Part shown: positions 9,242 to 40,334 of the stretch, piece after piece
Numbering within the stretch: the first letter of the stretch is position 1
Layout of the letters: every line of letters starts with the position of its first letter
IMG/VR virus record: IMGVR_UViG_3300032782_000001
Location: 248,001-312,000 of that record
Reading direction: 5' to 3' (one strand)
Length of the DNA: 64,000 nucleotides
Program-made: the position numbers and the translations under genes
Notes under the pieces: model-generated
The model's database searches: none
Seen by the model: the letters and a program-made list of their open reading frames with translations, nothing else
Told to the model about the DNA's origin: nothing

Positions 9242-9586
9242 GTGGATATTCATCAACTCAAAGCCATCGCAAAACGCGGCGGGATCGTTAAATGGATCGC
9301 TTCGGGCATGTACGAAAAGCTCGGAATGCTAGGAAAGCGAGTCACGGCTCAAGGGCCTAATTCCCCAATCCATTTCTTGTCTGGCGATCGAACCAAATTC
9401 CATTGTGTTGAAGTGAATCCGAAATCCACGGTCCCCGCGGGAGAATTGTTATTTCCTCGAGGCCCCGTTCCCTACGGATTGATCGTGAGTTCACATTACA
9501 AGTATAAAGAAACTGTGCGCTTCAAAGCTGAAGCCCGTGAACGTAAGAAGAACATGAAGATCGTAGCTGAAGTCATGGAATCCTGA
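9242..9586 (+). CDS. Hypothetical protein with C-terminal VMES tag
   Basis: Ends KIVAEVMES*. In-frame GTG at 9242 lies 5 nt after TAGTAT; the track start at 9182 overlaps the previous gene. Confidence 0.65.
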   Translation: MDIHQLKAIAKRGGIVKWIASGMYEKLGMLGKRVTAQGPNSPIHFLSGDRTKFHCVEVNPKSTVPAGELLFPRGPVPYGLIVSSHYKYKETVRFKAEARERKKNMKIVAEVMES

Positions 9587-9617
9587 AAGTATTCGATAGC
9601 AGATGTAAAAGCATTCC

Positions 9618-10934
9618 ATGGGTTCATTCAGCTACACGTGCGGAGTTTCTAAACTGCCAATCGAGGCCGGGGATAAAATCCGGTACATTCTTCTCACTGA
9701 AAATCCTTATGGCGATGATTGTGGAGCTAACGGACATTGGTTTCCTAGATCTTTCCCAATTCGAGCGGAATACAACGACTATGGTTCCGTCGAAAATGTG
9801 GAAGACGGGATCGGTCGTGATCTCTGGATGGAAGCTCTGAAGATCGACCTCTTATCGGTAGGAGTCGGAGATAATTCCGTGCATGATGTTCCAACTTCTA
9901 AAAATATGAAGTGGGAACAGTTGCTAGAAGCTATCGTGGAAAAACGAGTCTTTGTTCGTCAGGATGTTGGCGATACGAGGGCCGATCGGAAAAAATTGGA
10001 ACAGCATCTCGCAGATGGTCGGAAAACGGTCCCTAATGGGGTGCCAACCATGCAACGAGTATGTTCGGCCCTCAAGAAAGCAAAGCATGCTGTGACTTCA
10101 GCTGGATTCACACATGCAGGCTTTCTAGTGGACAAGATCCGCTACGGAACAATCCGTGTTCGGTGGTCGGGTAACAGTAAGTCTTACGGGAAAGATGTGG
10201 AAAAACTCGAGAAGGCACAAAAAGCCCTCTCGGAGTATGCCACCGTAGTGAAAGCCGGCTCAGGATCCTACGCACATATTGCTGAACTCATGGTTTACGC
10301 TAAGCCAAACACGGCGGGCTTTCATGATGGGAAGAGGCTTCCAAAGAAACGGCTCACGGTAAGCCACATCATGGTCCGTGAAGACGTTTGGCAAAAACTA
10401 TTGGGTATTCGTACTGAAGATTTTTACAACCATAGAAGGTATTTAGGCATCGAAGATCACCGCAAGGCCATTCGTGATCTTTATGATTTGTCTTGTAAAG
10501 AATATCATAAAACTTGCTTCAAAGTCGATAAAAATGCTTCACCAGAAATGGTCTCCATGATGGAGTGTGCTAAGAGACTCCGTTCGTTTGCATTAGAAAA
10601 CATAGACAATCATAGCCCTGTCGGGTTTATCGCCAAAGACGGGATTCCATTCGCGGTGGGGCTCGGAACTAATTGGCGACTTCTGATCGAAAAGAATCTT
10701 CCAGAAGTAGAAGCGGCTCCGGTTCTTGATTCCATTGCCGAAATGGTCCATGTCATGAAGGTGCTTCTTCCTGTCCGATGGTCATGGGTTCCGTCTACGT
10801 CCTGCGGACCTCAGTTCGGGGAATGGGAAAAACACGCTGTCGTGAACGACATTTTCTCACAAATTGCGACCGATATCGGTTTCCAACACAAAGTCCGACA
10901 GGAAGAATTCGAAAAGGAATGTCAGGGAAACTGA
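9618..10934 (+). CDS. Hypothetical phage protein (438 aa)
   Basis: Long ORF starting MGSFSYTCGVSKLPI; no recognisable catalytic motif. Confidence 0.7.
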   Translation: MGSFSYTCGVSKLPIEAGDKIRYILLTENPYGDDCGANGHWFPRSFPIRAEYNDYGSVENVEDGIGRDLWMEALKIDLLSVGVGDNSVHDVPTSKNMKWEQLLEAIVEKRVFVRQDVGDTRADRKKLEQHLADGRKTVPNGVPTMQRVCSALKKAKHAVTSAGFTHAGFLVDKIRYGTIRVRWSGNSKSYGKDVEKLEKAQKALSEYATVVKAGSGSYAHIAELMVYAKPNTAGFHDGKRLPKKRLTVSHIMVREDVWQKLLGIRTEDFYNHRRYLGIEDHRKAIRDLYDLSCKEYHKTCFKVDKNASPEMVSMMECAKRLRSFALENIDNHSPVGFIAKDGIPFAVGLGTNWRLLIEKNLPEVEAAPVLDSIAEMVHVMKVLLPVRWSWVPSTSCGPQFGEWEKHAVVNDIFSQIATDIGFQHKVRQEEFEKECQGN

Positions 10935-10940
10935 CAAGGA

Positions 10941-11150
10941 GTGATAGTGCAACAGAATCGTAGGAACAATATGGATCGTCGACCCGTCCGAGTACCCCCT
11001 GTGGAAATCATCTACTTGAGGCGTTCGTACAGAAATCGTTCAGCGGAAACCGCTGATGGAATCAAGACGGAGCAATCACCCAAAGGACCCGTGGAGTCAA
11101 GCCAAGAGCCCTCGCCGCCATCAGGCGAGCGTTTCCGCTCACAAGAGTGA
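10941..11150 (+). CDS. Possible small hypothetical protein
   Basis: AGGAG upstream of GTG, but the 3' end overlaps the convergent ParB-like gene by about 90 bp. Confidence 0.3.
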   Translation: MIVQQNRRNNMDRRPVRVPPVEIIYLRRSYRNRSAETADGIKTEQSPKGPVESSQEPSPPSGERFRSQE

Positions 11151-11703
11151 TGCTGCCATCAGATCGTTCCAAAATGATAGGGGCAGGAATCCCCGCCCCC
11201 TGGACCATCCCCTGGATTACACTATCGACATCCCGTCCATAACCTTCAGCAATATCGGTGGCCTCGTTTACGGACGAAATACCGAACGAATCTGTTCCTT
11301 CCAACCTTTGCCAGTCGGATTCTGATAAAGGCCGCATCTTGGCACTGTGCGCTTCCTGAAGCAGAGAAGGCATTTCGAGCCCTTCTTCATCAGCTAGGCG
11401 TACGAGTTCCTCCTCTTCTTCATCAAGGCTCGGAGGTACCCAAGAAACGGAAGGAACACCGGCAATATGGAAGGCCGCCACTAAGAGTCTGGTGGACACG
11501 TTTAAACCCGCTGGAGGGGTCTTCTGAGCCCATTGAGCTTTGGAACGAGTTTCGAACACAGAACTCTTGATTCCGTCGATCGTGAGATACCCAGAAAACT
11601 TCGCGTCTTCTAAAACATCTTCAGGAATTTCTTCAGGGTCCCAAGAGCCGTCTGGCTGAAGATGAAATCCGATTCCAGGAGTAAGTATCGGTTCATGTCG
11701 CAT
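11062..11703 (-). CDS. ParB/sulfiredoxin-like domain protein with ~60-aa N-terminal module shared with the neighbouring HNH gene
   Basis: C-terminal PAPIILERSDGSITLVSGNARLMAARALG resembles ParB-N (P..v.......ivdGhrRl.Aa..lG). Start placed at ATG 11703, overlapping the upstream stop. Confidence 0.6.
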   Translation of the reverse strand: MRHEPILTPGIGFHLQPDGSWDPEEIPEDVLEDAKFSGYLTIDGIKSSVFETRSKAQWAQKTPPAGLNVSTRLLVAAFHIAGVPSVSWVPPSLDEEEEELVRLADEEGLEMPSLLQEAHSAKMRPLSESDWQRLEGTDSFGISSVNEATDIAEGYGRDVDSVIQGMVQGAGIPAPIILERSDGSITLVSGNARLMAARALGLTPRVLWVIAPS

Positions 11704-12526
11704 ACTGACTCCGCAAATGTGTACGCCGACGATGACACCAACAACAAACAAGATCGCATTTCATGATTTCGTTCAAAACAATTTTATTCGAACGACGTTT
11801 GCTAACGAGATCAGACACTGCCATCCGTTTTATTTCACCAGGAATATGATCAAAATCCATGAGCAGTGGATTGAATGAAGATCCACAATCGGCACACGAG
11901 TTTTGCTTGAGCTCAGAAATGGGGCTAAGTATTCCATTTCTGGAAAAGGTTCGTTCACGATGGCATCCGACGCAAACAAGTTCACATAAAGAAATTTCTT
12001 GAAGAATGCGTTTTTGACTCCAATGTTGCTTTTGCAACATGCTAATGGAAAAGGTTTTCACACCTAAATGATCATAATCCATCATCCAAGGTTCAAATAT
12101 GCGTTTACAATCCGTACACGGGTTAGTTTTTAAAGAATCTACGAATTTCTTCAAACTCCGACGACGTTCTAAAGTAGAACGATTGTGTGATATTTTCTTT
12201 TTCGGATTAGACCGCCATTCTTTAAATATTAAGCTTTTACACTTTCTACACCGGGAGTCCCGGCCCATACCACCACGCTTAAACCTCGTGAAGGACTCCA
12301 AGGAAAGAATCATTCCGCATTTTGTGCATAATTTCCGATCCCCGAAGGCCCATTGTTCTCCCTCGGGGGTTTCAAACACGGCGGTCTTGAATCCCTCAAT
12401 AGTGAGATATCCTGAAAACTCCGCCTTAGAAATGACGCTGGACGGGACCTTCATGACGTCCCATTCACCTTCAGCGTTCAGACGGAAGGCGTTCCCAGGC
12501 TCAAGGCTAGGGCCGTCGGCCTTCAT
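11693..12526 (-). CDS. HNH endonuclease-like protein (Zn finger plus two tandem HNH repeats)
   Basis: CTKC...CRKC, then PCTDC..MDYDH...CELVCVGCHRERT and SCADC..MDFDH...CDLVCCWCHRRRT; the HNH part is visibly AT-richer than its flanks. Confidence 0.75.
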   Translation of the reverse strand: MKADGPSLEPGNAFRLNAEGEWDVMKVPSSVISKAEFSGYLTIEGFKTAVFETPEGEQWAFGDRKLCTKCGMILSLESFTRFKRGGMGRDSRCRKCKSLIFKEWRSNPKKKISHNRSTLERRRSLKKFVDSLKTNPCTDCKRIFEPWMMDYDHLGVKTFSISMLQKQHWSQKRILQEISLCELVCVGCHRERTFSRNGILSPISELKQNSCADCGSSFNPLLMDFDHIPGEIKRMAVSDLVSKRRSNKIVLNEIMKCDLVCCWCHRRRTHLRSQYAT

Positions 12527-12537
12527 CAGAAGAGAGA

Positions 12538-13059
12538 TTACTCCGACTTTTCGGAGTGATGACCCTTGTTGCGGCGCTCGAAATAGAACGTTGAGTTCTT
12601 GGATTGATCGCCGTATAGCGAATGGACAGCCTTCTCAATAGCCTCGAGCGGCTTGTCGAGATCTTGAACCGTATCGACTTCAGAGAAGATCCCTGCAACC
12701 TTCTCCACAATGGAAGCGATCTGGGGACGGATCGCAGCATTCTGAGGACGTTGAGCTGCTACGAAAGCTTGCTTGAGACCCGACAGGATACTGACGATTC
12801 GTCGGTAATTGGCGGCCGGAACCACGGCCGCGCTCCGAAGCTGATCGATTTGATCTCCAAGATGCTCGATATCAGACTTACGAGAATGCTCCCCGAAGGA
12901 ATTCTTCTCACCAGCCGGCTTCTCAACTTCACTTTGGAGCAAAGCGATCTGAGCCTCCAGACCGTCGATGCTACGGTCTACAGCCTCATCCTGCGGGTCC
13001 ATCTGCGCGAGACGGGTGGCGTGTTCGACAGCAGCGGCAACAATCTGAATTTGGCTCAT
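12538..13059 (-). CDS. Hypothetical helical protein (possible head/scaffold-associated)
   Basis: 173 aa, GAGG RBS, coiled-coil-like heptads. Confidence 0.6.
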   Translation of the reverse strand: MSQIQIVAAAVEHATRLAQMDPQDEAVDRSIDGLEAQIALLQSEVEKPAGEKNSFGEHSRKSDIEHLGDQIDQLRSAAVVPAANYRRIVSILSGLKQAFVAAQRPQNAAIRPQIASIVEKVAGIFSEVDTVQDLDKPLEAIEKAVHSLYGDQSKNSTFYFERRNKGHHSEKSE

Positions 13060-13099
13060 GTCTGGTCCTCTCTAGATAGAAAAGATTGAAGGGTTATGA

Positions 13100-14605
13100 T
13101 TAGCCCAACGCCTTTACTTCCATATCCCCATCTACCCGGACATGGTGCTTCTTGGCCCTTTGACCGATAGCAAAATTGGAAACGACTTGCTGGGCCGCCG
13201 CAGTCAGATCATCTGAAGTGAAGGTGACAGCGCCACCAGAAGTACCTCTTTCAGCCACCGCTCGGATAACGGTAGACTTAGCAAGTTCCTTCACATATGC
13301 GCCCGTAAGCCCTTCGCATAGTTCGATCACGGTGCTGATCGTATCTTTCGTAACCGAAGCATCGGGAACAGCATGAAGCTTCTTGAGGAAGGAATGAAGC
13401 ATAAGAGCACGGTCGATGGAATCCGGGTAGGGAATTTCAATTTTGACATCAAACCTACCTGGCCGATTAACAAGAGCCTCGTCCATTGAGGCGATGTCAT
13501 TGGTTGAAGCCATTACTACAACCCCAGCATTCTCTTGAGCCCCATCCAGACATGCCAAAAACTCATTGAGAACGCGACTTTCATAACCGCTCAGACCACT
13601 CCTGTTCCCTCCGAACAGGTCCATGTCTTCAATAAACACAATGCAAGGGGCCAAAGTCCTGGCGGCCTGGAACAGTGAAGTTACGTGTTCAGGATAATCA
13701 ATTGACTTTCCCGTGCACCAAATTCGAGTAGCTTGACTTTCAGTTTCATGCGAGATAGCACGAAACAATGTCGTTTTCGCCATTCCGGGCGGAGAAATAA
13801 GGATAGCATTCCGATTCGGGCACATGCCGACGGAAGCCAATTCCTCCATATGTTTGAGCACTTCTACGGTGTTGTCACGAATAGCGCATTTGACATGATC
13901 CTTGAGAACAATATCGTCCCAAGACGTCGAAGTCACTGCCATGAAGTCTAGATGACCACGTTCAAAGCAAAGACATTTCTTGAAATAAATATCATTAGCT
14001 CGAATAGACGCATCTAGATCGTGGAAGAACTTTTCAGCTGCTGCTTGTTGAGTAGGGTGAGCAAGAACCGTTAGACTACAATATGGCATCTCGTAACAGA
14101 AATCTGCCCGGACAACTAAGTGCGTATCGTCGACTTCGTTTCTGACAAAGAAAATACCGTAGACGGGCAGCGTCTCCGTCCGACCAAGGTCCACAGAAAG
14201 TTGTTCATACTGAATGCGGTATGAACTACGCCCTTTGAGGGCTTCTTTGAATTCATACTGGTCGAGGAAAGGTACGATTTCGTATTCGGCACCGTTCACG
14301 CCGTAATTTTTGAACAGACGAGTGAAAGCCCAGGCATTCAAATTCCTAGCAAATGCTGGATAAGTTCGATTGAGATTAATGGCAAGATGAATCTCACATC
14401 CTAGCCAAAGTTCTTTAATGTGGGAATCCGGGTCGGACGGGTACCAACGCTCCACTCGGCGAGCCAGAGCAGCCCGTTCGTCCACCTTCGAAAAATAGGA
14501 GTCCAGAATATAATTGGCGGCTCCGGCAAAAGCATCCGTAATTCCGTAAGGAATACTCACGAGGCTTGGAAGGTAGCCTGCAGTCTTGCGCACGGGTCGG
14601 CCCAT
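13100..14605 (-). CDS. AAA+ ATPase (classical AAA clade, FtsH/Cdc48-like module)
   Basis: Walker A variant ISPPGMAKTT, Walker B IVFIEDMD, SRH ASTNDIASMDEALVNRPGRFD. Confidence 0.85.
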   Translation of the reverse strand: MGRPVRKTAGYLPSLVSIPYGITDAFAGAANYILDSYFSKVDERAALARRVERWYPSDPDSHIKELWLGCEIHLAINLNRTYPAFARNLNAWAFTRLFKNYGVNGAEYEIVPFLDQYEFKEALKGRSSYRIQYEQLSVDLGRTETLPVYGIFFVRNEVDDTHLVVRADFCYEMPYCSLTVLAHPTQQAAAEKFFHDLDASIRANDIYFKKCLCFERGHLDFMAVTSTSWDDIVLKDHVKCAIRDNTVEVLKHMEELASVGMCPNRNAILISPPGMAKTTLFRAISHETESQATRIWCTGKSIDYPEHVTSLFQAARTLAPCIVFIEDMDLFGGNRSGLSGYESRVLNEFLACLDGAQENAGVVVMASTNDIASMDEALVNRPGRFDVKIEIPYPDSIDRALMLHSFLKKLHAVPDASVTKDTISTVIELCEGLTGAYVKELAKSTVIRAVAERGTSGGAVTFTSDDLTAAAQQVVSNFAIGQRAKKHHVRVDGDMEVKALG

Positions 14606-14640
14606 GCTGTACCGATACCAGAAGAAGGCTAAAGCCGAAA

Positions 14641-18183: not shown

Positions 18184-18525
18184 ATGGGAGACGTCATCTA
18201 TGCCTCCGACGAACATTCTCTCTACGGAGAATTATATCGAATTCTCAATGAGCTGGCTTTGGAAACCGACCTCATGGAAAAGGGTATCATCGTCGGATTC
18301 CATAGGATCGACAATTCTAACTGCAAATATGTATGTCAAATTCAAGACTGGGAGGGGGATGACAGTCCGATCGAATTTGAAAGGAGAATTGAGAAACTGG
18401 TAGAAGGTAATATTCTCATGATTCGACTCCAAGGACGGGGAGCCGATTGCAGATTTTACGTGATTGCGGAAACCATAGAAGAAGCTTTAGGGAAAATTAC
18501 CGTGTTCCAGATCATGGAATCATGA
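18184..18525 (+). CDS. Hypothetical protein with C-terminal IMES tag
   Basis: 113 aa ending ITVFQIMES*. Confidence 0.7.
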   Translation: MGDVIYASDEHSLYGELYRILNELALETDLMEKGIIVGFHRIDNSNCKYVCQIQDWEGDDSPIEFERRIEKLVEGNILMIRLQGRGADCRFYVIAETIEEALGKITVFQIMES

Positions 18526-18753
18526 TTCCATGATCTGACGAACAATATGCACATCACAAGAATCGTCTTTCTCGGGCTGACTATTGAAAGACATCATACC
18601 GCATCGGTCGCATTTCTGTGCAACCATGGCAGGGTCGTATGACCAAGTCATATTAACGTGGACCTCTACAGATTCTTTGTTAGGCTTTTCAGCTCGTACA
18701 CACAGAAATGATTGGTCCTCGCCGTCTACGACATCGCGCCATTTATGATCCAT
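18520..18753 (-). CDS. Small CxxC protein with C-terminal IMES tag
   Basis: CDRC...DDSCDVHIVRQIMES*. Confidence 0.7.
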   Translation of the reverse strand: MDHKWRDVVDGEDQSFLCVRAEKPNKESVEVHVNMTWSYDPAMVAQKCDRCGMMSFNSQPEKDDSCDVHIVRQIMES

Positions 18754-19229: not shown

Positions 19230-19556
19230 TCAACTTTCCATGACTTCCCAGGCTTTCATGGTCGGGGTCATGACGACCTCCCACAAGCCTTGTTCATTAG
19301 ACGCTATTACGAGATCTTCCCATAAAATACTACAGAAATTTTCTCGGAGTTCAAAAATGGCGTTGGGACAAATCTTGTGATTATCGGCATATCTCGTCAG
19401 CGAATTAACGAACTCAACAAATACCTTTTCGTTATCAGGATTCCCTACCGGGTATAAGCGCCTCGCGCGCTCCATACATGCGCCCAAGATCCGTGCTTTT
19501 TCCCAGCTGCGGAGTTCTTCGTCTGTTGGTTCAGAAGAATAATGTGTCGCAGTCAT
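19230..19556 (-). CDS. Hypothetical protein with C-terminal VMES tag
   Basis: Ends MKAWEVMES* (Ser codon AGT). Confidence 0.7.
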   Translation of the reverse strand: MTATHYSSEPTDEELRSWEKARILGACMERARRLYPVGNPDNEKVFVEFVNSLTRYADNHKICPNAIFELRENFCSILWEDLVIASNEQGLWEVVMTPTMKAWEVMES

Positions 19557-19600
19557 TCCATCTTCAAGGCCTTACACTGGAAAGAATTGTAATGTTTGGA

Positions 19601-19957
19601 GTGGAGCGCCTCATATTGGAACCCACATTGCTCATGCATTGGATTCGGGAAGCTGAATGGAATGAACGCACGAAAAGAGTGAAAGCTGTGGAATTGGGCA
19701 TAGGAAGTTATGTAGAATTCCGACGATGTCGACCTACAGGATTCGATTCAATAACTGATATAAAATCTCTTGCAACCGGACGCATGGGGACAGTTTGGGG
19801 TGTGGAAATTATCGCATCCAGATTTAACGCGGAAAACGTGATTGTGTTCGTTTTTGAGGACGATTCTCGAGAAATCCGTGGAAAATGCATGCAAAAGGAA
19901 GATCACATGTGCGGACACGAAAATTGTCGAGTCGTCCGTGAAGTCATGGAGAGCTGA
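19601..19957 (+). CDS. Hypothetical protein with C-terminal VMES tag
   Basis: Ends CMQKEDHMCGHENCRVVREVMES*. Start is GTG 19601 (TAATGT-N5) or ATG 19592. Confidence 0.65.
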   Translation: MERLILEPTLLMHWIREAEWNERTKRVKAVELGIGSYVEFRRCRPTGFDSITDIKSLATGRMGTVWGVEIIASRFNAENVIVFVFEDDSREIRGKCMQKEDHMCGHENCRVVREVMES

Positions 19958-20428: not shown

Positions 20429-20824
20429 TTAGCTAGACATAACTTCAGTAACACAACATTCTTCATCAGAATGATGATTTCCAGCAACCATCGTTCCGCA
20501 TTTCCAACAGAACATCTCGAGGATGAACACGGCAACGGTCCGACGCCCGGAAGTGTCTGCCATATGTTTGGAAATCAATTTCCGCACGTTCTCAGGAAAG
20601 AAATTATCTCTCGTGCGACTGAAATTCCCGAGGGAAATAGTCCAATGACGATTTTCCACTGGATCAATCATCGTCCCGTCTTTATCGTATCCAACTGACG
20701 TCCAACCCAAAAGAGGTGGGAAAACCCCGGGAATGTCAGCACAAATGACAGAATCTCCTGTGCGCCTGACATGCTCGTGCATATCTTCAAAAAGTTCGCG
20801 CACAGTTTGGAAGAGAACTTGCAT
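20429..20824 (-). CDS. Hypothetical protein with CxxC/HH..EEC module and VMSS tag
   Basis: Ends CWKCGTMVAGNHHSDEECCVTEVMSS*. Confidence 0.7.
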   Translation of the reverse strand: MQVLFQTVRELFEDMHEHVRRTGDSVICADIPGVFPPLLGWTSVGYDKDGTMIDPVENRHWTISLGNFSRTRDNFFPENVRKLISKHMADTSGRRTVAVFILEMFCWKCGTMVAGNHHSDEECCVTEVMSS

Positions 20825-20839
20825 TGTAGAGTTGTCTCT

Positions 20840-21307: not shown

Positions 21308-21535
21308 TCAGGATTCCATGACATCACGAACGATGCAATGAGGGCAACCACTCTCTGCCCCATCGTCTGTCATCTTTTTACAAATCGGGCAGGGAGGATC
21401 AGGCCAATCCACAAGCATGGACCGCCGAGGCTGACTAATGTAATCGATAGTCTGCCGGATGGGGTCCGTATTCGGAACGACCAATTTCTTGATAATAGGG
21501 AACGAAAACTTCTTGAATTCAGGAACGTCAACCAT
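21308..21535 (-). CDS. Small Zn-finger protein with VMES tag
   Basis: DPIRQTIDYISQPRRSMLVDWPDPPCPICKKMTDDGAESGCPHCIVRDVMES*; ATG 21535 follows the upstream stop at 21537. Confidence 0.7.
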   Translation of the reverse strand: MVDVPEFKKFSFPIIKKLVVPNTDPIRQTIDYISQPRRSMLVDWPDPPCPICKKMTDDGAESGCPHCIVRDVMES

Positions 21536-21536
21536 T

Positions 21537-21701
21537 TCAAGACCCCATGATTTGGGCGACGACACATTCTTCTTCTGTATGCACTAATCCACGCTCGACT
21601 AAGAGCCTGCACTTCTCGCAAGAAATCAAAACGACGAATTTCTTCGGGCCTTTCATGTTGACCCGAATCACCTGTGTGATTTCAAATTCAGGACATCGCA
21701 T
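21537..21701 (-). CDS. 54-aa Zn-finger protein with IMGS tag (below ORF-track cutoff)
   Basis: Hand translation: MRCPEFEITQVIRVNMKGPKKFVVLISCEKCRLLVERGLVHTEEECVVAQIMGS*; it exactly fills the gap between its neighbours. Confidence 0.7.
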   Translation of the reverse strand: MRCPEFEITQVIRVNMKGPKKFVVLISCEKCRLLVERGLVHTEEECVVAQIMGS

Positions 21702-21702: not shown

Positions 21703-21948
21703 TCAAGACTCCATGACTTGAATCACAACACAAGCTTCTTCGGAATGAAGATGCTCACGACCTTCCAAAATGGTCCTTCCACAATCTAAACATGAATAAA
21801 TACGCATCATGCCTTCTTCCGGCATCAAATCAGACAGTGTCATTTTCTTGAGAGGAGTCGTTTCTAATTCCTGACGGATGGGCATCCTTCCAATAAACTC
21901 TGGCTCGGATTCCCGATAAACCGCCCCCGTAAATTTCAAATTAACCAC
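21703..21948 (-). CDS. Small Zn-finger protein with VMES tag
   Basis: GTG 21948 directly after the upstream stop; ...EPEFIGRMPIRQEL...CLDCGRTILEGREHLHSEEACVVIQVMES*. Confidence 0.7.
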   Translation of the reverse strand: MVNLKFTGAVYRESEPEFIGRMPIRQELETTPLKKMTLSDLMPEEGMMRIYSCLDCGRTILEGREHLHSEEACVVIQVMES

Positions 21949-21949: not shown

Positions 21950-22201
21950 TCAGGATTCCATGATGGAGCGAACGGTGCATTCAAGACAACCGAGTTCGGC
22001 TCCGTTATCGGAGTCAAGTAATCCGCAGATCCGACAAGGGACATCTGGAAGTTGACTGACTGGCGAACGCCGTCGGACTTCACCTGCGACCCAGAGACGG
22101 TCATTGATGTCGGACATAATGCTTCGTCCGAGTTTTGCTCGCTTCTCAGGATCTAGAAGACACTGTTTGACGAATTTGATCTTATCGTCTTCGTGAGACA
22201 C
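21950..22201 (-). CDS. Small Zn-finger protein with IMES tag
   Basis: ...RAKLGRSIM...VSQLPDVPCRICGLLDSDNGAELGCLECTVRSIMES*. Confidence 0.7.
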   Translation of the reverse strand: MSHEDDKIKFVKQCLLDPEKRAKLGRSIMSDINDRLWVAGEVRRRSPVSQLPDVPCRICGLLDSDNGAELGCLECTVRSIMES

Positions 22202-23227: not shown

Positions 23228-23443
23228 TTAGCTCTCTATGACGGACCGAATGACACATTCAGGACACCCGTCGTCAGCTCCACCGTCGTTTACGATTACG
23301 CCGCTATCAATTACAAAGATCTTCTTGCAACTCGCACACGGTTTATCGTAATCCCGTGTAGTTCGAGCAGGGAGGGTCATCGCTCGTGCCAGTGCGAGCC
23401 TTCCCGCATGCGTAGAAATGATCTGTGTAATCACGGAGTCCAT
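23228..23443 (-). CDS. Small Zn-finger protein with VIES tag
   Basis: ...AGRLALARAMTLPARTTRDYDKPCASC...GGADDGCPECVIRSVIES*. Confidence 0.7.
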   Translation of the reverse strand: MDSVITQIISTHAGRLALARAMTLPARTTRDYDKPCASCKKIFVIDSGVIVNDGGADDGCPECVIRSVIES

Positions 23444-23662: not shown

Positions 23663-23893
23663 CTAGCTCTCCATCACTTGCATTACAATACACTCTTCCG
23701 GAGAATGATGGTGTCCATATTTGAATGTGAATCCGCAATCGTCACATTTCGTTATTAACGAGATCTCCATGAATATAGGCTGTGGATCCACGTGGTAGAC
23801 CACTAGAGTTTGTGGCTGGAGTTCCATCTTCTTGGGTGGAAGATCTGGTCCATTCCAGCGAATTTCGCCAATATCAAAAGATTCTGGCATCAT
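23663..23893 (-). CDS. Small Zn-finger protein with VMES tag
   Basis: CDDCGFTFKYGHHHSPEECIVMQVMES*. Confidence 0.7.
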   Translation of the reverse strand: MMPESFDIGEIRWNGPDLPPKKMELQPQTLVVYHVDPQPIFMEISLITKCDDCGFTFKYGHHHSPEECIVMQVMES

Positions 23894-31540: not shown

Positions 31541-32586
31541 TCTTCAGACTGACTCAGTAGCAAAAGTCCAGTCGCGACGGCCGTCATAGGGTCTTTAGCG
31601 GCCCTGATTTCTGAAATTTGGATGGGAAACTTAGCACGATGAATTTCAAACCGTTCTTTGAACTTATCAAGAAATCCGGAAGCCAAAGAAGTTCCTCCAC
31701 TGACTACGAGAGGTACAGGCTTCGGGACCAGAAGCTCTTGACGAGCTTTTGAAAATTGTTGGATGATGGTATCAATGGAATAGTCAATGAGCGCTTGAAT
31801 AAATAACGCAATGGCTTCACCTTCAAGAGAACTCGATTTTTTACTAATGTCAATCCCACTTTCTTTAATGGAACAAATTTTGGCGGCTGTCGTACTGACA
31901 GCTTTGGCAGCTCCGGAGTCTACCCAATCTCCTCCGCGTCCTACGGAAAATTCCAGAGCGCTCATAGCATTGTAACTAAGACAAACGTTAGTCATGCCGG
32001 AGCCATACGAAATGCCGAGACCTGAAAAATTCTCTTTGGAACATTCCGAGAACACGATGGCCTGAGCCTCATTGGCAGGTTCAGCAGTAAATCCAAGTTC
32101 TGTCAAAATCTTCTTGAGAATAGCAGAGTGGTAAGTAACATCTGAACCTTGCACGTCAACAGCTGGAGCTGGCACTGAATAGACACATTTTTCACCGGAC
32201 TTACGAGGAGCACCCAAAATTCTCTTGATCATCAGAGCGATGACTTTTTGCGCATCCACCTCACCGGGGGTGATCACACCACCAGACATTGGACGACGAG
32301 CTTCTCGATTAAATAAATTCGCCGTCTCTAAGGCTTCATCCCCAATGATCAAAAGTTTCCCATCAAGCTCGACATGACTCGTGCCTGACAGTTTCAACAT
32401 TCGCATATTTCGGTTATCAAGAGGTAAATCGATGAAGGCATCCCTGATTCTAGTAGTTTTGACAGTCTTCCCATTTTGACGGGCAGACACAAAGTTCATA
32501 GTACCGGCATCAAGTGACGCTCCTGCGACAGCGGTATCATCGATGTCGTCAAGGTCAACACTAAACTTGGTCTCATTCTTCGCCAT
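31537..32586 (-). CDS. Actin-fold ATPase (MreB/ParM/FtsA-like superfamily)
   Basis: Phosphate-1 SLDAGTMNF, connect-1 ANEAQAIVF, phosphate-2 ISYGSGMTNV, adenosine VVSGGTSL, connect-2 DPMTAVATGL. Confidence 0.85.
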   Translation of the reverse strand: MAKNETKFSVDLDDIDDTAVAGASLDAGTMNFVSARQNGKTVKTTRIRDAFIDLPLDNRNMRMLKLSGTSHVELDGKLLIIGDEALETANLFNREARRPMSGGVITPGEVDAQKVIALMIKRILGAPRKSGEKCVYSVPAPAVDVQGSDVTYHSAILKKILTELGFTAEPANEAQAIVFSECSKENFSGLGISYGSGMTNVCLSYNAMSALEFSVGRGGDWVDSGAAKAVSTTAAKICSIKESGIDISKKSSSLEGEAIALFIQALIDYSIDTIIQQFSKARQELLVPKPVPLVVSGGTSLASGFLDKFKERFEIHRAKFPIQISEIRAAKDPMTAVATGLLLLSQSEE

Positions 32587-33794: not shown

Positions 33795-34010
33795 TCAGCT
33801 CCCCATAACTTCATAGATGATTTCTTCTTCAGGAGATAACCACTGAAGACGTATATTCCAAAAAGGAACTGCCGGACGATTACCGCGTTTTCGTTTTTCT
33901 TTCCAACTGACGGGTACGCATTCTTGGACGACCCAAATCTGATCCCCTTGGATTCGAAAAACAGTCCCCGGTTCATGGTATCGGGTCGCGTCTCTCTGAA
34001 CCATGATCAT
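33795..34010 (-). CDS. Small protein with VMGS tag inserted among neck genes
   Basis: ATG 34010 lies 4 nt after the upstream stop; ends EEEIIYEVMGS*. Confidence 0.65.
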   Translation of the reverse strand: MIMVQRDATRYHEPGTVFRIQGDQIWVVQECVPVSWKEKRKRGNRPAVPFWNIRLQWLSPEEEIIYEVMGS

Positions 34011-34014
34011 GAAA

Positions 34015-35346
34015 TTAGGAACGTCTGTTTGCATTTTCGTAGGACACTGTAGTGCCTCGGATTTCACGTTCATCCGGAATCGAAGCAGCTTCAGTAACCA
34101 TCGGAGTAGCATTACCCTTGCCTGGAATTGTATATCGCGTCTGAGGGGCTACCAGTACAGAAGTATCAAGAACTGGAACTTGATATCGAATATCTGACTC
34201 ATCAAACTTGGACACATTGAAGAACTGTGCGAGTTGCATGCCACGGTTACTGGGCATCCGAACTGGTCCAACAGCATATCTGTCGCCGTTGAGTTTTACA
34301 ATGAAATCTCGCTGAGAAATAAGAGGGCTCGGTAAAGCCCAAACTTCATATGAATGTTCAACCGTACGACCACGAGCACTTTGAGCAATAGACTTAGCGG
34401 CATCATCTGGAGAGATATCGATGTCATACGGACCATCATACCCACCGATTATTCCTGTGCCATAACAAACAAGACAATCTGCACTAGGTTGTCGGTGCAG
34501 ACTGGAATAACATCCACACTTTGGTCCTGCGGCCCGGCGGATCATTAATTTGACTCTCTCGCCGCCTTGTTCCAACATCCAACGTTGGCGGCGAATAGCT
34601 TCACGCCAAATGTAATCGAGCTTCTCAATTTCAAAATTATTCGCTATGGCGGCATCTTCTAAACGTGTTTCGAGAAGCTGGCCACTATCCGCATCATAAG
34701 CTACGGTTGTGATACGATAGAAAATGCGTTGAGCAAGAGTAGTAGGAACTTGATTTGACAAGTACCTGTACGTAGCCAAAACGATGGAGTTAGGGTCTTT
34801 TGGTAAAACAGCATTCGTTTGAATTTGACTAGCTACATCAAACGTAGGCTCGCGACGAAGTTCCACTTCCCCTCTAGTCGCGTTTATGGATTCAACAAAC
34901 GCAGGAACCCCATCAACGGTTACTTGAACATTCAAATTTGTAATATTGGCAGATCCGGGAGAAGGATATATGACGATCGGATTATATCGAGTCCGAAACT
35001 CGTAACGTCCGTCTCCGTCTGAGCTAGGTCCACGAAAGAAAAAATTTTTAGAAACATCTTCCTGGAGAGCTAGGACAGTCCTCGTACTATCACGCCAATA
35101 AGCTGCGCCTACGGGGACAGTATTAAGACGCTCATATGGGCCGTACTCGGAGTCAAAACTCCTGTAAATATTGACCCCTAAAAGATCGAATCGAGAATTC
35201 GCTTGTAATTCTCCCGGCAGGGTCCAGCGAATGTCGAACGTCTCTTTTAGAAAACCTGAAGATACGAATATATTCAGTGGGGGTAGAGGTAAAGCAGGTG
35301 AATCCTGCTCCAGAATCCCAATTTTCCTGTCCGGCGGGAAAGGCAT
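34015..35346 (-). CDS. Head-closure/neck-like structural protein with FnIII/Ig-like N-terminus and Cys cluster
   Basis: 443 aa; CGC...CLVCYGTGIIGGY, then beta-rich DFIVKLNGDRYAV head-closure-like region. Positional inference. Confidence 0.5.
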   Translation of the reverse strand: MPFPPDRKIGILEQDSPALPLPPLNIFVSSGFLKETFDIRWTLPGELQANSRFDLLGVNIYRSFDSEYGPYERLNTVPVGAAYWRDSTRTVLALQEDVSKNFFFRGPSSDGDGRYEFRTRYNPIVIYPSPGSANITNLNVQVTVDGVPAFVESINATRGEVELRREPTFDVASQIQTNAVLPKDPNSIVLATYRYLSNQVPTTLAQRIFYRITTVAYDADSGQLLETRLEDAAIANNFEIEKLDYIWREAIRRQRWMLEQGGERVKLMIRRAAGPKCGCYSSLHRQPSADCLVCYGTGIIGGYDGPYDIDISPDDAAKSIAQSARGRTVEHSYEVWALPSPLISQRDFIVKLNGDRYAVGPVRMPSNRGMQLAQFFNVSKFDESDIRYQVPVLDTSVLVAPQTRYTIPGKGNATPMVTEAASIPDEREIRGTTVSYENANRRS

Positions 35347-35365
35347 ATCCTACCGGATTGTCTAA

Positions 35366-35677: not shown

Positions 35678-35686
35678 CGAGGAACT

Positions 35687-37036: not shown

Positions 37037-37133
37037 ACCCGAGAAGCTTATAGAAGGCTCCGGGCTGTATAGTTAGAGGTTACCATGATCCCCATAGAGC
37101 GAAAATTTCGAAGAAGAGGAGGTATGGGGATCC

Positions 37134-37748: not shown

Positions 37749-37759
37749 GAAACGAAGTT

Positions 37760-38659
37760 TCAGATCCCGAGGAACCTGCGAGGCGTGAGCGCTCCGCGGC
37801 CTACTGACGGACCGAAACTGCTACGAATACCAATCCCGTACCTGGACTGCTGGAGACCGCGGATGATTTTCACGGTCTCCTTAGCGGCCACAACCATCTC
37901 AGCAAAACGAGATTGAGCGTCATTGGCCATCCCCTGATATTTGGCACTCTTTTCTACATCCAGTGAAACTCCGCCAATAGAATAAGAGAATTCATCAGCC
38001 ACCCAATTCAAGGCCAAGGCATTGATGGCATGAACCATTGCTCCAGTGAACAGAAGAGTTCTCCAGTCTCGATGTTCTGAGATGAGCTTATCAAGAGTGT
38101 CGTAAAAAGTTTGCGGGGCATACATGTTTATGGCGTCGTTTGAGACGCGCAGAAATTCTAAAAGTTCGCAATCTTCCCAAAGGTATCCAAATACCCGCGT
38201 GAATTTATTGACCGATTCTTCTCCGGCTGGAGGCAAAAAATGATAATTGCGGCCCGGGTTGTTATCCCGGAGCATGATCCGGAGACCTCTGACCAGGTCA
38301 AATTCAACCGGCGTAATACCTGGAACAGAAATTACCTGAGTAGAATTCTCGACGATCGAGAATTCTTGAACCACTTCCACTTGTTTCGAATTGACAAGTT
38401 CTCGGAAATACCAACGAATTCGATATGAACCAATATTGGCGTCGATTGGAATAATGAATGAAGCAAAATATTCACCGACCGATGGATTGAATGGCTTCCG
38501 GTTTGGAGGCGGTAAGAGAACTTCCACCCCCGCCGTGTTGTCAAAAATGCTGTAAGAAATTTCTGAAGCGTTTTTCGGGCTTCCGTCTTTGGCTTTCAGA
38601 AAAATATTCAATCCCTGAGAGCGAGACAGTTCTTGACCACGGCGGAAGGTGACGCTCAT
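37760..38659 (-). CDS. Head-tail adaptor-like protein with N-terminal Ig-like domain
   Basis: VRGLRIMLRDNNP...FSYSIGGVSLDVEKSAKYQ pattern of gp15/gp6-like adaptors; the N-terminal GEYFASF..GSYRIRW domain recurs in the 62783 gene. Confidence 0.55.
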   Translation of the reverse strand: MSVTFRRGQELSRSQGLNIFLKAKDGSPKNASEISYSIFDNTAGVEVLLPPPNRKPFNPSVGEYFASFIIPIDANIGSYRIRWYFRELVNSKQVEVVQEFSIVENSTQVISVPGITPVEFDLVRGLRIMLRDNNPGRNYHFLPPAGEESVNKFTRVFGYLWEDCELLEFLRVSNDAINMYAPQTFYDTLDKLISEHRDWRTLLFTGAMVHAINALALNWVADEFSYSIGGVSLDVEKSAKYQGMANDAQSRFAEMVVAAKETVKIIRGLQQSRYGIGIRSSFGPSVGRGALTPRRFLGI

Positions 38660-38661
38660 TT

Positions 38662-39393
38662 TCAGGCCTCTTCGAACGGATTCCTACCATACTTCTTGTC
38701 GAGGACGCTCTGATAAGCGGCCCCTCCACTCATACCTGCAAAAGGAGGAGTCCCGTGAGGATTGTCACTGATTCCGCGAACTTTCTTATCAATTGGTCGT
38801 TCTTTGCGCGTGAAACCATAACCTTCCAAGTCAGCTTGAATCTCACGAATGGGAGTTTTCGTAGTTTCATTAAGATTTTTCAAATCGATATGATCAAATT
38901 CTCCCATTTCATTGTCGTATAGATATTGAGCGAAAGTGTCAACATCCGCATATTCAGGCTCCGAAGAATCCCTCTCTACAGGCTTTGAAGGACCGGGAGG
39001 GTTAGAAGATGGCCTCTTCGGAGGCTCTGCTGGCTTTAGGTGTTTCCGAGCTTCTTCATCACTCTTATAGGGACTCTTCGATTCCGGGACACGCTTTATT
39101 GGCTTTTGGGGAGCCGCCGCTTTGGCGTGTTTGGCAGCTTCAACCTGTTCGAGGCGCTTGTTGGCTTCTTCTTTGGAAGGATAACAACCACCGCTCCAGT
39201 CCGGATTGTGTTCGGACTTGACACAGTATCCCTTCCCCTTCTCTTTCTTGACATACGAGACGCTCTCCATTCCGGCAATACGGAGCGCCACCGAAATCAA
39301 ATCAAATGGGGAAGAACCGAACCGAGGCTTGTGATGAAGAACTACCTCAGTCCGGGAAGCGATTCGGATAGCAATGTCCTTCAGTTCCATCAC
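38662..39393 (-). CDS. Hypothetical protein (possible internal head protein)
   Basis: 243 aa; GYCVKS..GGCYPSKEEANKRLEQVE motif; IAIRIAS and VALRIAG motifs. Confidence 0.6.
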   Translation of the reverse strand: MMELKDIAIRIASRTEVVLHHKPRFGSSPFDLISVALRIAGMESVSYVKKEKGKGYCVKSEHNPDWSGGCYPSKEEANKRLEQVEAAKHAKAAAPQKPIKRVPESKSPYKSDEEARKHLKPAEPPKRPSSNPPGPSKPVERDSSEPEYADVDTFAQYLYDNEMGEFDHIDLKNLNETTKTPIREIQADLEGYGFTRKERPIDKKVRGISDNPHGTPPFAGMSGGAAYQSVLDKKYGRNPFEEA

Positions 39394-39447
39394 GGATGAC
39401 TTGAGATAAGAGGCGGAAGTCGGGATAAAGAAGAAGTATGGAATTCT

Positions 39448-40092
39448 ATGACAGCGACCAGTCCGGGGCTCGGCTCGTGGTGGATGTACCCCATGAAACC
39501 AGCTCGAGTCACGGAAGCCGTCCTATCATCCATCAACCCATCCGACTACTTGATGGAAAAGAAGTATGATGGATGGAGGGCTATCCTAATTGTCAGTCAT
39601 GGGATTCCCGAATTATGGACCAGGGAAAGGCGACGCATCGAGATGCCGACGAATCTCGACAACCAACTCCGATCGCTCAAGCTTCCAGAGGGCACTGTCC
39701 TCGACGGGGAAATCTGGAACCCTGAGAAGAGGGGAGGGTGGAAACACGCCAAAGGCGTTGAATGTCAAATCACCTTTTGGGACGCCATCCGAAAAGGAAA
39801 TCAAGATCTTAGTCGGAATCCACTCGAAGAGCGAAAAGAACGACTTCGGAATCTAGTATCTCCCACTGATTGTGTGAAAATCGTGGAAGACTTTCCGGCA
39901 ACTGTAAAATCAATCGCTGCCGCAAGGGCAGAGGCAATTAGCGCCCGAGGGAATGCGCGTTCTGGATTCGTACATGGAGTGGTGATCAAACGTCGAGAGT
40001 CCCCCCGGCGTGATCACGCCACTAAGTCCCATGAACATTCGGATTGGATGAAAGTGGTTTTCGACGGCATGTCAGGGTGGGCGCCTAGGTGA
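39448..40092 (+). CDS. ATP-dependent ligase adenylation domain (no OB domain)
   Basis: Motif I EKKYDGWR, III VLDGEI, IIIa ITFWDAI, IV variant FVHGVVIK, V WMKV; ends right after motif V. Confidence 0.8.
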   Translation: MTATSPGLGSWWMYPMKPARVTEAVLSSINPSDYLMEKKYDGWRAILIVSHGIPELWTRERRRIEMPTNLDNQLRSLKLPEGTVLDGEIWNPEKRGGWKHAKGVECQITFWDAIRKGNQDLSRNPLEERKERLRNLVSPTDCVKIVEDFPATVKSIAAARAEAISARGNARSGFVHGVVIKRRESPRRDHATKSHEHSDWMKVVFDGMSGWAPR

Positions 40093-40334
40093 AATTCCAC
40101 GAATGGAAAGACACTGGGATCAGAGCCACCGATTTGCGCTCCTTCGGACGGTCGAAAAAGAAAATGTCCCGGTACGAGTGCACGAAATGTGGACTCGTGA
40201 TGAACATTTCAGATGTCGATATTCAAATCGAAAAGAAAAACCCCGGGCATATCCACACCGTCGCTAAGGAAACAGTTCAGTCTGATTTCCAAGACTGTGA
40301 TCTCACAATCGTGGCTATGGTGATGAAGACTTAG
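40089..40334 (+). CDS. Small CxxC protein with divergent VMKT tag
   Basis: CTKC...DCDLTIVAMVMKT*; GTGA overlap with the ligase gene. Confidence 0.6.
   Translation: MKFHEWKDTGIRATDLRSFGRSKKKMSRYECTKCGLVMNISDVDIQIEKKNPGHIHTVAKETVQSDFQDCDLTIVAMVMKT

What the first reader, a model, noticed from the sequence alone, without database searches (positions are those of the whole stretch)
9242..40334. Fourteen small proteins with unrelated N-termini share a C-terminal 'VMES' peptide tag
Seen directly, these stop-proximal sequences: KIVAEVMES (9586+), ITVFQIMES (18525+), HIVRQIMES (18520-), KAWEVMES (19230-), RVVREVMES (19957+), CVTEVMSS (20429-), CIVRDVMES (21308-), CVVAQIMGS (21537-, a 54-aa ORF missing from the track), CVVIQVMES (21703-), CTVRSIMES (21950-), CVIRSVIES (23228-), CIVMQVMES (23663-), EIIYEVMGS (33795-), TIVAMVMKT (40334+). 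Nine end exactly in [VI]MES, and 13 of 14 have V/I seven residues from the end. The terminal Ser uses both TCN and AGY codons and all three stop codons occur, which argues for selection on the peptide rather than on a DNA site. About 10 carry a Zn-binding module just upstream, in two main subtypes: CxxC..H.(H/S).EEC and CxxC..GA..GCxxC. The genes lie on both strands; 11 cluster in 18.2-23.9 kb and others are inserted among neck and ligase genes. Inference: a modular cargo + (Zn finger) + C-terminal address system, for example for virion packaging/ejection, timed proteolysis, or docking to one host or phage partner. I know of no described phage C-terminal tag of this form.
Basis: partly seen in the sequence, partly recalled or inferred. 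Interest (0 to 1): 0.9.

Follow-up and report, generated by a model that had tools for sequence, protein, structure and literature searches.

The report
Shared C-terminal tail on phage miniproteins
One clade of giant bacteriophages ends dozens of small proteins, several of them copies of pieces of its own capsid protein, with the same short helix finishing in Val-Met-Glu-Ser; the tail is real and conserved, belongs to no described family, and probably docks these proteins to one shared partner during head assembly.

Summary
All 14 ORFs exist, and 9 of the 10 [VI]MES tetrapeptides in the six-frame translation sit directly before a stop. Codons vary synonymously. The tail also persists in relatives with 47 to 66% GC, so selection acts on the peptide.

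The window belongs to a 436-kb jumbo myophage (an IMG/VR contig). The tail is confined to the clade whose major capsid protein (MCP) is at least 84% identical: 48 tails in 675 kb of head-module loci, against 0 in 204 kb of the sister group and 0 in a complete 485-kb sister genome.

The tail is a roughly 12-residue amphipathic helix with Met fixed three residues from the end. In about half of cases a zinc knuckle precedes it. It matches no Pfam or PHROG family.

New here: the N-termini are not all unrelated. Five of the 14 are diverged copies of MCP segments (N-arm, or residues about 179-254). A conserved tagged protein sits beside the head-maturation protease gene, and in one relative a tagged gene lies immediately after the MCP gene.

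Best reading (confidence about 0.4): a portable docking handle that needs a free C-terminus and acts in head assembly. The partner was not identified.

The parts
9242..9586 (+). Tagged protein, 114 aa, GTG start, no zinc motif; tail ends VMES. Lies 31 nt upstream of a 438-aa gene.
   Evidence: no Pfam hit
18184..18525 (+). Tagged protein, 113 aa, acidic, no zinc motif; tail ends IMES. Convergent with the next gene.
   Evidence: no Pfam/PHROG hit; single-sequence AF2 model poor, pLDDT 54
18511..18534 (.). Perfect 24-bp palindrome formed where the two convergent IMES-stop ends overlap by 6 nt.
18520..18753 (-). Tagged protein, 77 aa, zinc-knuckle type; tail ends IMES. Orthologues in L001, L055 and L048 keep the tail.
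19230..19556 (-). Tagged protein, 108 aa, no zinc motif; tail ends VMES.
19592..19957 (+). Tagged protein, 121 aa from ATG 19592 (the ORF is open from 19478). Residues 28-89 match MCP profile positions 179-240. Degenerate zinc site; tail ends VMES.
   Evidence: E 1.4e-6
20429..20824 (-). Tagged protein, 131 aa, C2HC zinc type; tail ends VMSS. Orthologues P0002 and P0005 end VMLE and VMAE at the same length.
21308..21535 (-). Tagged protein, 75 aa, C4 zinc type. The N-terminal part matches the MCP N-arm (profile positions 24-67); tail ends VMES.
   Evidence: E 6.6e-5
21537..21701 (-). Tagged protein, 54 aa, C2HC zinc type; tail ends IMGS. The next gene starts 1 nt after its stop.
21703..21948 (-). 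Tagged protein, about 81 aa (GTG 21948), C2HC zinc type. The N-terminal part matches MCP profile positions 232-254 (220-254 on the longer ORF); tail ends VMES.
   Evidence: E 3.4e-5
21950..22201 (-). Tagged protein, 83 aa, C4 zinc type. Paralogue of 21308-21535, with a weak MCP N-arm match (profile positions 9-56); tail ends IMES.
   Evidence: E 0.026
23228..23443 (-). Tagged protein, 71 aa, C4 zinc type. Residues 3-45 match the MCP N-arm (profile positions 11-50). Tail ends VIES, the only member with Ile in place of Met.
   Evidence: E 1e-6; AF2 with a 16-sequence alignment gives an N-terminal helical hairpin (pLDDT above 90) and a terminal helix at residues 61-70
23663..23893 (-). Tagged protein, 76 aa, C2HC zinc type; tail ends VMES.
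33795..34112 (-). Tagged protein, 105 aa, inside the neck/tail module. Zinc ligand lost (SPEEE where relatives have SPEEC); tail ends VMGS. Genes at the same position in L023 (detectably homologous) and L018 end EVMLF and EVMLT.
40164..40334 (+). Weakest member, 56 aa: C-x2-C plus His and Cys; tail ends VMKT. Convergent with a radical-SAM gene.

Best explanation
The 'VMES tag' is the end of a portable protein module: an amphipathic alpha-helix of about 12 residues.

Its consensus is acidic-acidic-(Cys or other)-hydrophobic-Val-x-x-Val/Ile-Met-Glu-Ser-COOH. In about half of the cases a four-ligand zinc knuckle precedes it, with its last Cys nine residues from the end. The module is under purifying selection as a peptide and almost always has to be the last thing in the protein.

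The module is joined to N-terminal pieces of different origin. A substantial share of these are diverged copies of the phage's own major capsid protein: the N-arm, possibly the E-loop region (one marginal match), and the C-terminal beta-strand region. In HK97-fold shells these are contact elements. That last point is general knowledge of the fold, not something tested here.

The module exists only in one clade of jumbo myophages.

Inferred mechanism: the helix with its free carboxyl end is a docking handle for one conserved partner that acts in head morphogenesis. Candidates are the capsid inner surface, the scaffold, or the maturation protease. Tagged miniproteins would then be recruited to, or hold contacts within, the assembling procapsid.

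Shown: the module itself, its terminal position, its conservation, its clade restriction, the capsid-fragment chimeras, and the head/neck-module locations.

Inferred: docking, the identity of the partner, and incorporation into capsids.
For: Terminal position and chance:
- In the window, 9 of 10 [VI]MES occurrences precede a stop. In relatives' loci the figure is 46 of 62.
- In 92 non-redundant tails selected for [VI]M at -4/-3, positions -1 and -2 allowed 10 and 9 residue types and gave Ser 71 and Glu 54. Position -7, required only to be one of seven hydrophobic or small residues at -7 or -8, was Val 57. Positions -9 and -10 were unconstrained: Cys at -9 in 42, Glu at -10 in 51.

Peptide-level selection:
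- Codons vary synonymously.
- The tail is kept in genomes of 47, 55 and 66% GC.

Terminal requirement:
- 41 of 43 small hits of the module profile in 1.84 billion proteins end at the C-terminus.
- In the one lineage where the module is internal in two adjacent genes (L164), Met is replaced by His.

Clade restriction:
- 48 tails in 675 kb of head loci with MCP at least 84% identical, against 0 in 204 kb of loci with MCP 76-77% identical.
- 0 tails in the complete 485-kb LR745208.1.

Capsid link:
- The MCP profile matches about 20 of 79 tagged proteins at consistent positions.
- 11 of 12 MCP-like fragment ORFs outside the true MCP genes end in the tail.
- 5 of the 14 window proteins are MCP-derived.
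- The true MCP is intact and untagged: L175 in the window's own genome, and L060.
- In L060 a tagged N-arm copy starts 82 nt after the MCP gene.
- A 170-215 aa tagged protein lies upstream of the head genes on the opposite strand in 12 or more genomes (in L175 directly beside the maturation-protease gene). Most remain homologous after the tail is removed.
- 33795-34112 sits in the neck module.

Structure: AF2 predicts the tail as a helix.
Against: - No partner was identified, and no binding or multimer modelling was possible.
- Most tagged genes lie in a small-gene cluster that also holds PTH2, HAD and kinase-like genes, which are not structural.
- About three quarters of the N-terminal parts have no detectable parent.
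- In the zinc-containing members the helix may be needed simply to complete the zinc site.
- The AF2 confidence for the tail is only 52-62.
- Expression timing is unknown; the sigma-70 scan was uninformative.
- No virion proteomics exist for this uncultured clade.
Confidence: 0.4

Rival explanations
1. Common descent only. All members descend from one small zinc-finger gene, and the helix is kept because it completes a treble-clef-like zinc site or a small fold. There is no shared partner and no address function; the non-zinc members are decayed derivatives.
For: - The last zinc ligand sits at a fixed distance, nine residues from the end, in 42 of 92 tails.
- C4, C2HC and ligand-lost versions interchange within one N-terminal subfamily. 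33795 has SPEEE where relatives have SPEEC.
- AF2 places the last ligands at the start of the terminal helix.
Against: - 50 of 92 tails have no Cys at -9, and many of these follow long helices with no zinc motif.
- A packing helix would tolerate Leu or Ile for Met and need not stop at the same residue. Yet every member identified independently of the Met criterion has Met at -3 except one Ile (23228-23443), and 41 of 43 database hits are exactly terminal.
- Bodies with no detectable homology to one another carry the tail.
Confidence: 0.2
2. Adaptor or degron for an AAA+ machine. The tail delivers the miniprotein, or whatever its N-terminal bait holds, to the phage's own Cdc48/PAN-like AAA ATPase (13100-14605, minus strand) or to a host Clp/Lon/FtsH protease. 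Precedents from established knowledge: the C-terminal ClpX-binding peptide of SspB, the ssrA tag, and the C-terminal MIM helices that bind the MIT domain of Vps4.
For: - The AAA ATPase belongs to the classical unfoldase clade. Its best matches are VAT/p97 D2, PAN, FtsH and CdvC.
- It has a 215-residue N-terminal domain of unknown kind.
- It is conserved in 24 clade loci, whereas the tag-less LR745208.1 has only a 78-residue generic match.
- It lies 3.6 kb from the cluster.
Against: - No peptidase partner was seen.
- Read directly from the sequence, the Walker B region reads E-D rather than D-E, and I see no canonical aromatic-hydrophobic-Gly pore loop.
- The tail is acidic and polar at its end, unlike known bacterial C-terminal degrons.
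- The links to the capsid protein and the head module are not explained, unless the baits target capsid-binding factors.
Confidence: 0.15
3. Immune decoys or competitor poisons. The capsid-protein fragments mimic epitopes or interfaces. They either occupy host sensors that detect the capsid protein or block capsid assembly of rival phages, and the common tail supplies stability or an effector contact.
For: - The fragments copy particular segments of a capsid protein that is 76-100% identical across the loci recovered.
- Copies are multiple, fast-evolving and clustered like accessory genes.
Against: - No defence or anti-defence family matched; PADLOC was not searched.
- Most tagged proteins are not capsid-derived.
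- The conserved tagged protein next to the protease gene looks like a core gene rather than an accessory one.
Confidence: 0.1
4. Nucleic-acid-level by-product. The codons for Met-Glu-Ser plus the stop are conserved as a Shine-Dalgarno/translational-coupling cassette for the next gene, or as a recombination or terminator site.
For: - In 19 of 38 tagged genes a downstream start lies between -4 and +12 nt of the stop, 6-10 nt after GGAG, GGGG or GGAA.
- In the window and L065, all four Glu-to-Gly variants are in such coupled contexts; two of the three in L001 are not.
- Tails ending in Glu create overlapping ATGA starts.
Against: - The other 19 tagged genes have no nearby downstream gene, including five convergent gene ends in the window, and still end in VMES.
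- Conservation extends to -10, too far upstream for a ribosome-binding site.
- Codons vary synonymously, and genome GC ranges from 47 to 66%.
- Nothing is conserved downstream of the stop.
Confidence: 0.03

Closest known systems
Encapsulin cargo-loading peptides (C-terminal targeting peptides that dock cargo to the inside of an HK97-fold shell)
   Same: A short peptide at the extreme C-terminus is shared by otherwise unrelated proteins. The shell protein has the HK97 fold, as this phage's capsid protein presumably does. The peptide is modular and portable.
   Different: The sequence differs: encapsulin peptides are Gly/Ser-rich and extended (established knowledge), whereas this one is an acidic amphipathic helix with a fixed Met. 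Binding to the shell is not shown here. Many members also carry a zinc knuckle or a capsid-protein fragment, which encapsulin cargo does not.
T4 capsid targeting sequence and internal proteins; C-terminal coat-binding helices of scaffolding proteins (P22, herpesviruses)
   Same: Short peptides or terminal helices that bring proteins into a procapsid. Small proteins are packaged in many copies. The genes lie near head genes.
   Different: The T4 signal is N-terminal and is cut off by the prohead protease (established knowledge). Scaffold helices sit on a single dedicated protein, not on dozens. The scaffold-like protein of this phage does not end in the tail.
C-terminal AAA+ docking peptides (SspB ClpX-binding tail, ssrA tag, ESCRT-III MIM helices binding the Vps4 MIT domain)
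   Same: A free C-terminal peptide or helix on several proteins is recognised by one ATPase. A classical-clade AAA ATPase specific to the clade is encoded nearby.
   Different: There is no sequence resemblance to those motifs, no associated peptidase, and the ATPase motifs look atypical. Binding was not tested.
Treble-clef / zinc-ribbon mini-domains (for example Zn_ribbon_8 and the FmdB family)
   Same: A C-x2-C knuckle plus two further ligands, the last at the start of a helix. The module is 28-35 residues long.
   Different: No Pfam zinc-ribbon model reaches its cut-off (best E 0.008-0.5). The defining feature here, the terminal helix ending in VMES, belongs to none of those families, and half of the tails lack the zinc site.

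Membership tests
Encapsulin-type C-terminal cargo-loading peptide | A short peptide at the extreme C-terminus shared by unrelated cargo proteins | tested here: met
   41 of 43 small database hits are exactly terminal, and the protein bodies show no detectable similarity to one another.
Encapsulin-type C-terminal cargo-loading peptide | The peptide binds the luminal face of the HK97-fold shell protein and causes encapsulation | not testable with these tools
   No multimer modelling or experiment was available. The only indirect evidence is the head-module locations and the capsid-fragment chimeras.
Encapsulin-type C-terminal cargo-loading peptide | Sequence resembles the known Gly/Ser-rich consensus | tested here: not met
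   The tail consensus from 92 sequences is acidic and helical with a fixed Met. The comparison with the known consensus rests on my own knowledge.
ssrA-like or other bacterial C-terminal degron | A non-polar C-terminal end recognised by ClpXP, ClpAP, FtsH or Tsp | tested here: not met
   The last two residues are Glu-Ser in most tails. Recognition itself was not tested.
Pfam or PHROG zinc-ribbon families, or any described phage family | A profile match above the family cut-off | tested here: not met
   No family reached its cut-off for any of the 14 window proteins (Pfam for all, PHROGs for ten), for 10 larger tagged proteins from relatives (Pfam), or for the tagged head-module protein (both libraries).
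HK97-fold major capsid protein (phrog_2522), for the N-terminal parts | Significant profile match to MCP at consistent positions | tested here: met
   About 20 of 79 tagged proteins match, 5 of them among the 14 window proteins, with E from 7e-17 to 3e-2. Matches fall at profile positions 8-67 or 179-255. The reference MCP matches phrog_2522 at 2e-47.
HK97-fold major capsid protein (phrog_2522), for the N-terminal parts | A complete fold able to form a capsomer | tested here: not met
   Only 20-62 residues of the roughly 291-residue MCP are present in any one miniprotein. They are fragments, not capsid-protein paralogues.
Translational-coupling or Shine-Dalgarno cassette | A downstream start codon within a few nucleotides in every case | tested here: not met
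   Only 19 of 38 tagged genes have one.

The most novel reading that the evidence does not exclude
A jumbo-phage clade has evolved its own C-terminal sorting code, a helix ending in Val-Met-Glu-Ser-COOH. The code loads or anchors a changing repertoire of miniproteins, at least 16 in the 81 kb of this genome that was examined, onto the assembling head. Many of these miniproteins are built by fusing copies of the capsid protein's own contact elements to the handle. This would be a phage counterpart of encapsulin cargo loading or of peroxisomal PTS1 sorting, combined with interface mimicry of the capsid lattice.
Probability: 0.2. Interest if true: 0.9.

Novelty: new variant of a known kind. Interest (0 to 1): 0.7.

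Why it matters
Terminal sorting or docking peptides are known for encapsulins, for T4 internal proteins and for AAA+ substrates. A clade-wide C-terminal code shared by dozens of unrelated phage miniproteins has not, to my knowledge and in the literature searched, been described.

If the tail is a docking handle, three things follow:
- It gives a one-line rule for predicting a whole class of head-associated or partner-bound proteins in uncultured jumbo phages.
- It offers a ready-made 12-residue tag for loading foreign proteins.
- It provides a natural example of new genes being built by joining fragments of a structural protein to a portable terminal module.

The capsid-fragment chimeras are of interest whichever function holds. 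Among the ORFs scanned, 11 of 12 capsid-like fragments outside the true capsid genes carry the tail.

Tried and rejected
- Megablast of the cluster against GenBank phages found no match.
- Pfam, PHROGs and NCBIfam found nothing for the tagged proteins and for most neighbouring genes.
- The single-sequence AF2 model of 18184-18522 was poor (pLDDT 54). A Foldseek search of the second model against PDB gave no match.
- The sigma-70 promoter and terminator scan was uninformative. No tRNA genes were found.
- The Shine-Dalgarno/coupling explanation was rejected as the cause. It does appear to shape the last two residues.
- The DNA-site explanation was rejected.
- The actin-like protein is less likely to be the receptor, because the tag-less LR745208.1 has a 50%-identical orthologue in the same position.
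- A portal-protein origin for one subfamily rests on two marginal tblastn hits (E 0.01 and 0.03), and a direct comparison found nothing. It is not claimed.
- A match of P0035 to a LAGLIDADG ORF is marginal (E 0.003) and is not claimed.
- No parent other than the capsid protein was found among 2631 large ORFs on hand.
- Literature searches for the motif, for volactin in phages, for capsid targeting and for capsid decoys found nothing relevant.
- Host assignment is weak. It rests on two contigs binned into MAGs, one Phycisphaerales and one Verrucomicrobiota.

Full report
**Observation**

A six-frame scan reproduces all 14 stop-proximal peptides at the stated stops. The tetrapeptide [VI]MES occurs ten times in all six frames of the 64-kb window. 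Nine of these are followed directly by a stop, and the tenth lies opposite a gene. The last four codons vary synonymously: five Ser codons, both Glu codons, four Val/Ile codons and all three stops. Nothing is conserved downstream of the stop. The zinc motifs are as described. None of the 14 proteins reaches the cut-off of any Pfam family, and none of the ten scanned against PHROGs matches there.

**What the window is**

The window is part of IMGVR_UViG_3300032782_000001, a 436,316-bp contig. The 1557-aa protein at 24277-28950 is a giant tail sheath. It is 30% identical to the annotated sheath of Tunturiibacter phage Tunturi_5 and 40% identical to that of the uncultured 485-kb phage LR745208.1.

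Homology to Tunturi_5 names three more genes:
- the head-tail connector (37760-38659);
- a minor tail protein (34015-35346);
- the tail terminator (29965-31173).

So the main cluster (18.2-23.9 kb) lies just downstream of the sheath gene, and 33795-34112 lies inside the neck module. Fifty-four IMG/VR loci share the sheath.

**The tail is conserved across a clade and is a peptide feature**

- A syntenic 38-kb relative (L001) carries 16 such endings in 18.7 kb, many without any zinc motif.
- A 66%-GC contig (L065) has 8 among 19 genes, and a 55%-GC contig (L066) has 4. The window itself is about 47% GC.
- In the other sheath-linked loci, [VI]M at positions -4/-3 of predicted genes occurs 23 times against 1.6 expected (four of the 23 come from loci retrieved by a tail pattern).
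- An exact degenerate DNA pattern for one zinc subtype found five stretches in all of IMG/VR. All five are true members, and at least three lie on contigs placed in this clade by sheath or MCP.
- A 39-position profile of the zinc-plus-tail module was searched against 1.84 billion representative proteins. It returned 43 small single-stretch proteins, 41 of which match through to their last or second-last residue. The 80 long hits are cysteine-rich repeat proteins that never reach the end of the profile.
- One of the two exceptions, together with the gene next to it in L164, carries the module internally, and there Met is replaced by His.
- Ninety-two non-redundant tails were selected for [VI]M at -4/-3 (so those two positions are fixed by construction). 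Of the other positions, -1 and -2 were restricted to 10 and 9 residue types and -7/-8 to a hydrophobic or small residue at one of the two, while -9 and -10 were free. The counts are Ser 71 at -1, Glu 54 at -2, Val 57 at -7, Glu 51 at -10 and Cys 42 at -9.
- The hydrophobic positions (-8, -7, -4, -3) form one face of a helix. AF2 with a 16-sequence alignment predicts a terminal helix.

**Rival: a ribosome-binding or coupling cassette**

In 19 of 38 tagged genes a downstream start lies within -4 to +12 nt of the stop. In the window and L065 the Glu-to-Gly variants all occur in that context (in L001 only one of three does), and tails ending in Glu create overlapping ATGA starts. Coupling therefore shapes the last two residues. 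The other 19 genes have no nearby downstream gene, including five convergent gene ends in the window, and still end in VMES. This cannot be the cause of the tail.

**Clade restriction**

The complete LR745208.1 genome was read in ten pieces and has no such ending. Head-module loci split cleanly:
- those whose capsid protein is at least 84% identical to the L060 type, a group that includes the window's own genome (L175), have 48 tails in 675 kb;
- those at 76-77% identity have none in 204 kb.

L175 adds two more tagged genes to this genome.

**The N-terminal parts**

With the last 12 residues removed, only 3 of 435 pairs among 30 tagged proteins match by BLASTP. A chance tblastn hit led further.

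The capsid protein of LR745208.1 (L079 4418-5293, phrog_2522, E 2e-47) begins with the very motif that defines one N-terminal subfamily of tagged proteins. Its C-terminal strands match a second subfamily.

A profile built from 54 capsid proteins matches about 20 of 79 tagged proteins at consistent positions, 8-67 or 179-255. Five of these are among the 14 window proteins:
- 23228-23443;
- 21308-21535;
- 21950-22201;
- 19592-19957;
- 21703-21948.

In a six-frame scan of 3025 ORF segments, 11 of 12 capsid-like fragments outside the true capsid genes lie in ORFs that end in the tail. One protein, P0054, is the capsid C-terminus with the zinc module inserted in frame.

The true capsid genes are intact and untagged. 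In L060 a tagged N-arm copy starts 82 nt after the capsid gene.

A 170-215 aa tagged protein lies upstream of the head genes on the opposite strand in at least 12 genomes; in L175 it sits directly beside the head-maturation protease gene. Most of these proteins remain homologous after the tail is removed, and all keep the tail.

**Interpretation**

What is shown:
- a portable terminal module under peptide-level selection;
- restriction to one phage clade;
- attachment to bodies of different origin, including fragments of the capsid protein;
- repeated location in head and neck modules.

What is inferred: the module is a docking handle that needs a free C-terminus and binds one conserved partner in head morphogenesis. 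I put this at about 0.4.

The main rivals are:
- a purely structural helix inherited from one ancestor (0.2);
- an adaptor or degron for the clade-specific Cdc48/PAN-like AAA ATPase at 13100-14605 or for a host protease (0.15);
- decoys or poisons based on capsid mimicry (0.1).

The actin-like protein is a less likely receptor, because the tag-less sister genome has it too.

**Comparison with known systems**

The closest analogues are encapsulin cargo-loading peptides, the T4 capsid targeting sequence, the coat-binding helices of scaffolding proteins, and the C-terminal docking peptides of AAA+ adaptors. The tail resembles none of them in sequence, and the key property, binding, could not be tested. 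I therefore do not file it as a member of any of them. I rate it a new variant of a known kind, namely terminal docking or sorting peptides. The capsid-fragment chimeras are an unexpected addition.

Noticed in passing
window 31537-32586 (-): A 349-aa protein matches Pfam Volactin (an archaeal actin homologue) over its full length, E 4e-70. It sits inside the neck/tail module and is conserved in 30 clade loci. LR745208.1 has a 50%-identical copy and LR756511.1 a 31%-identical one.
   Followed up: partly
window 18511-18534: Two convergent tagged genes overlap by 6 nt, so their identical IMES-stop ends form a perfect 24-bp palindrome.
   Followed up: partly
window 13100-14605 (-) and 11062-13059 (-): A single-ring Cdc48/PAN/FtsH-like AAA ATPase has an unknown 215-residue N-domain. 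Its Walker B region reads E-D, and no canonical pore loop is evident. With the three genes downstream of it, it is conserved in 17-24 clade loci, while LR745208.1 has at most weak partial matches to them.
   Followed up: partly
L164 613-1024: Two adjacent genes carry the zinc-plus-helix module internally, each followed by a 30-35 residue extension. In both, the otherwise fixed Met is His.
   Followed up: partly
L066 10811-10990; P0054 (L163 242-448): The first is a 59-aa ORF that matches only the last ~36 residues of the capsid protein and lies just after tandem tagged N-arm copies. The second is a 68-aa ORF that is the capsid C-terminus with the zinc module inserted in a hairpin loop. Both look like remains or intermediates of a broken capsid-gene copy.
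   Followed up: partly
L175 9034-9507: The 157-aa gene immediately after the window phage's own capsid gene ends in a near-tail with Leu in place of Met (VLES).
   Followed up: no
window 24277-28950 (-): The tail sheath is 1557 aa, several times the usual size, and is conserved at 44-75% identity across 54 IMG/VR loci.
   Followed up: partly
window 55504-62778 (-): A 2424-aa ORF lies in a stretch of 61-63% GC, whereas the rest of the window is about 47% GC.
   Followed up: no
window 40331-51923 (-): A run of genes includes a B12-binding radical-SAM enzyme (Pfam). Two further ORFs begin with N-terminal motifs that I read as NAD-dependent epimerase-like, which suggests a sugar or DNA modification cluster; those two were not run against Pfam.
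   Followed up: no
window 20771-21307 (+), 22202-22612 (-), 22616-23176 (-): A PTH2 peptidyl-tRNA hydrolase, a HAD domain of the RNA-repair 'Swiss Army Knife' type and a weak kinase-like protein are interleaved with the tagged genes.
   Followed up: no
L079 525-4214 (LR745208.1): A 1229-aa ORF with a LAGLIDADG homing-endonuclease domain lies directly downstream of the capsid gene in the tag-less sister genome.
   Followed up: no
L065 and L081: Two relatives' contigs were binned into MAGs, one Phycisphaerales (Planctomycetota) and one Verrucomicrobiota. This is a weak hint that the hosts belong to the PVC superphylum. The nearest cultured relative by sheath infects an acidobacterium.
   Followed up: partly
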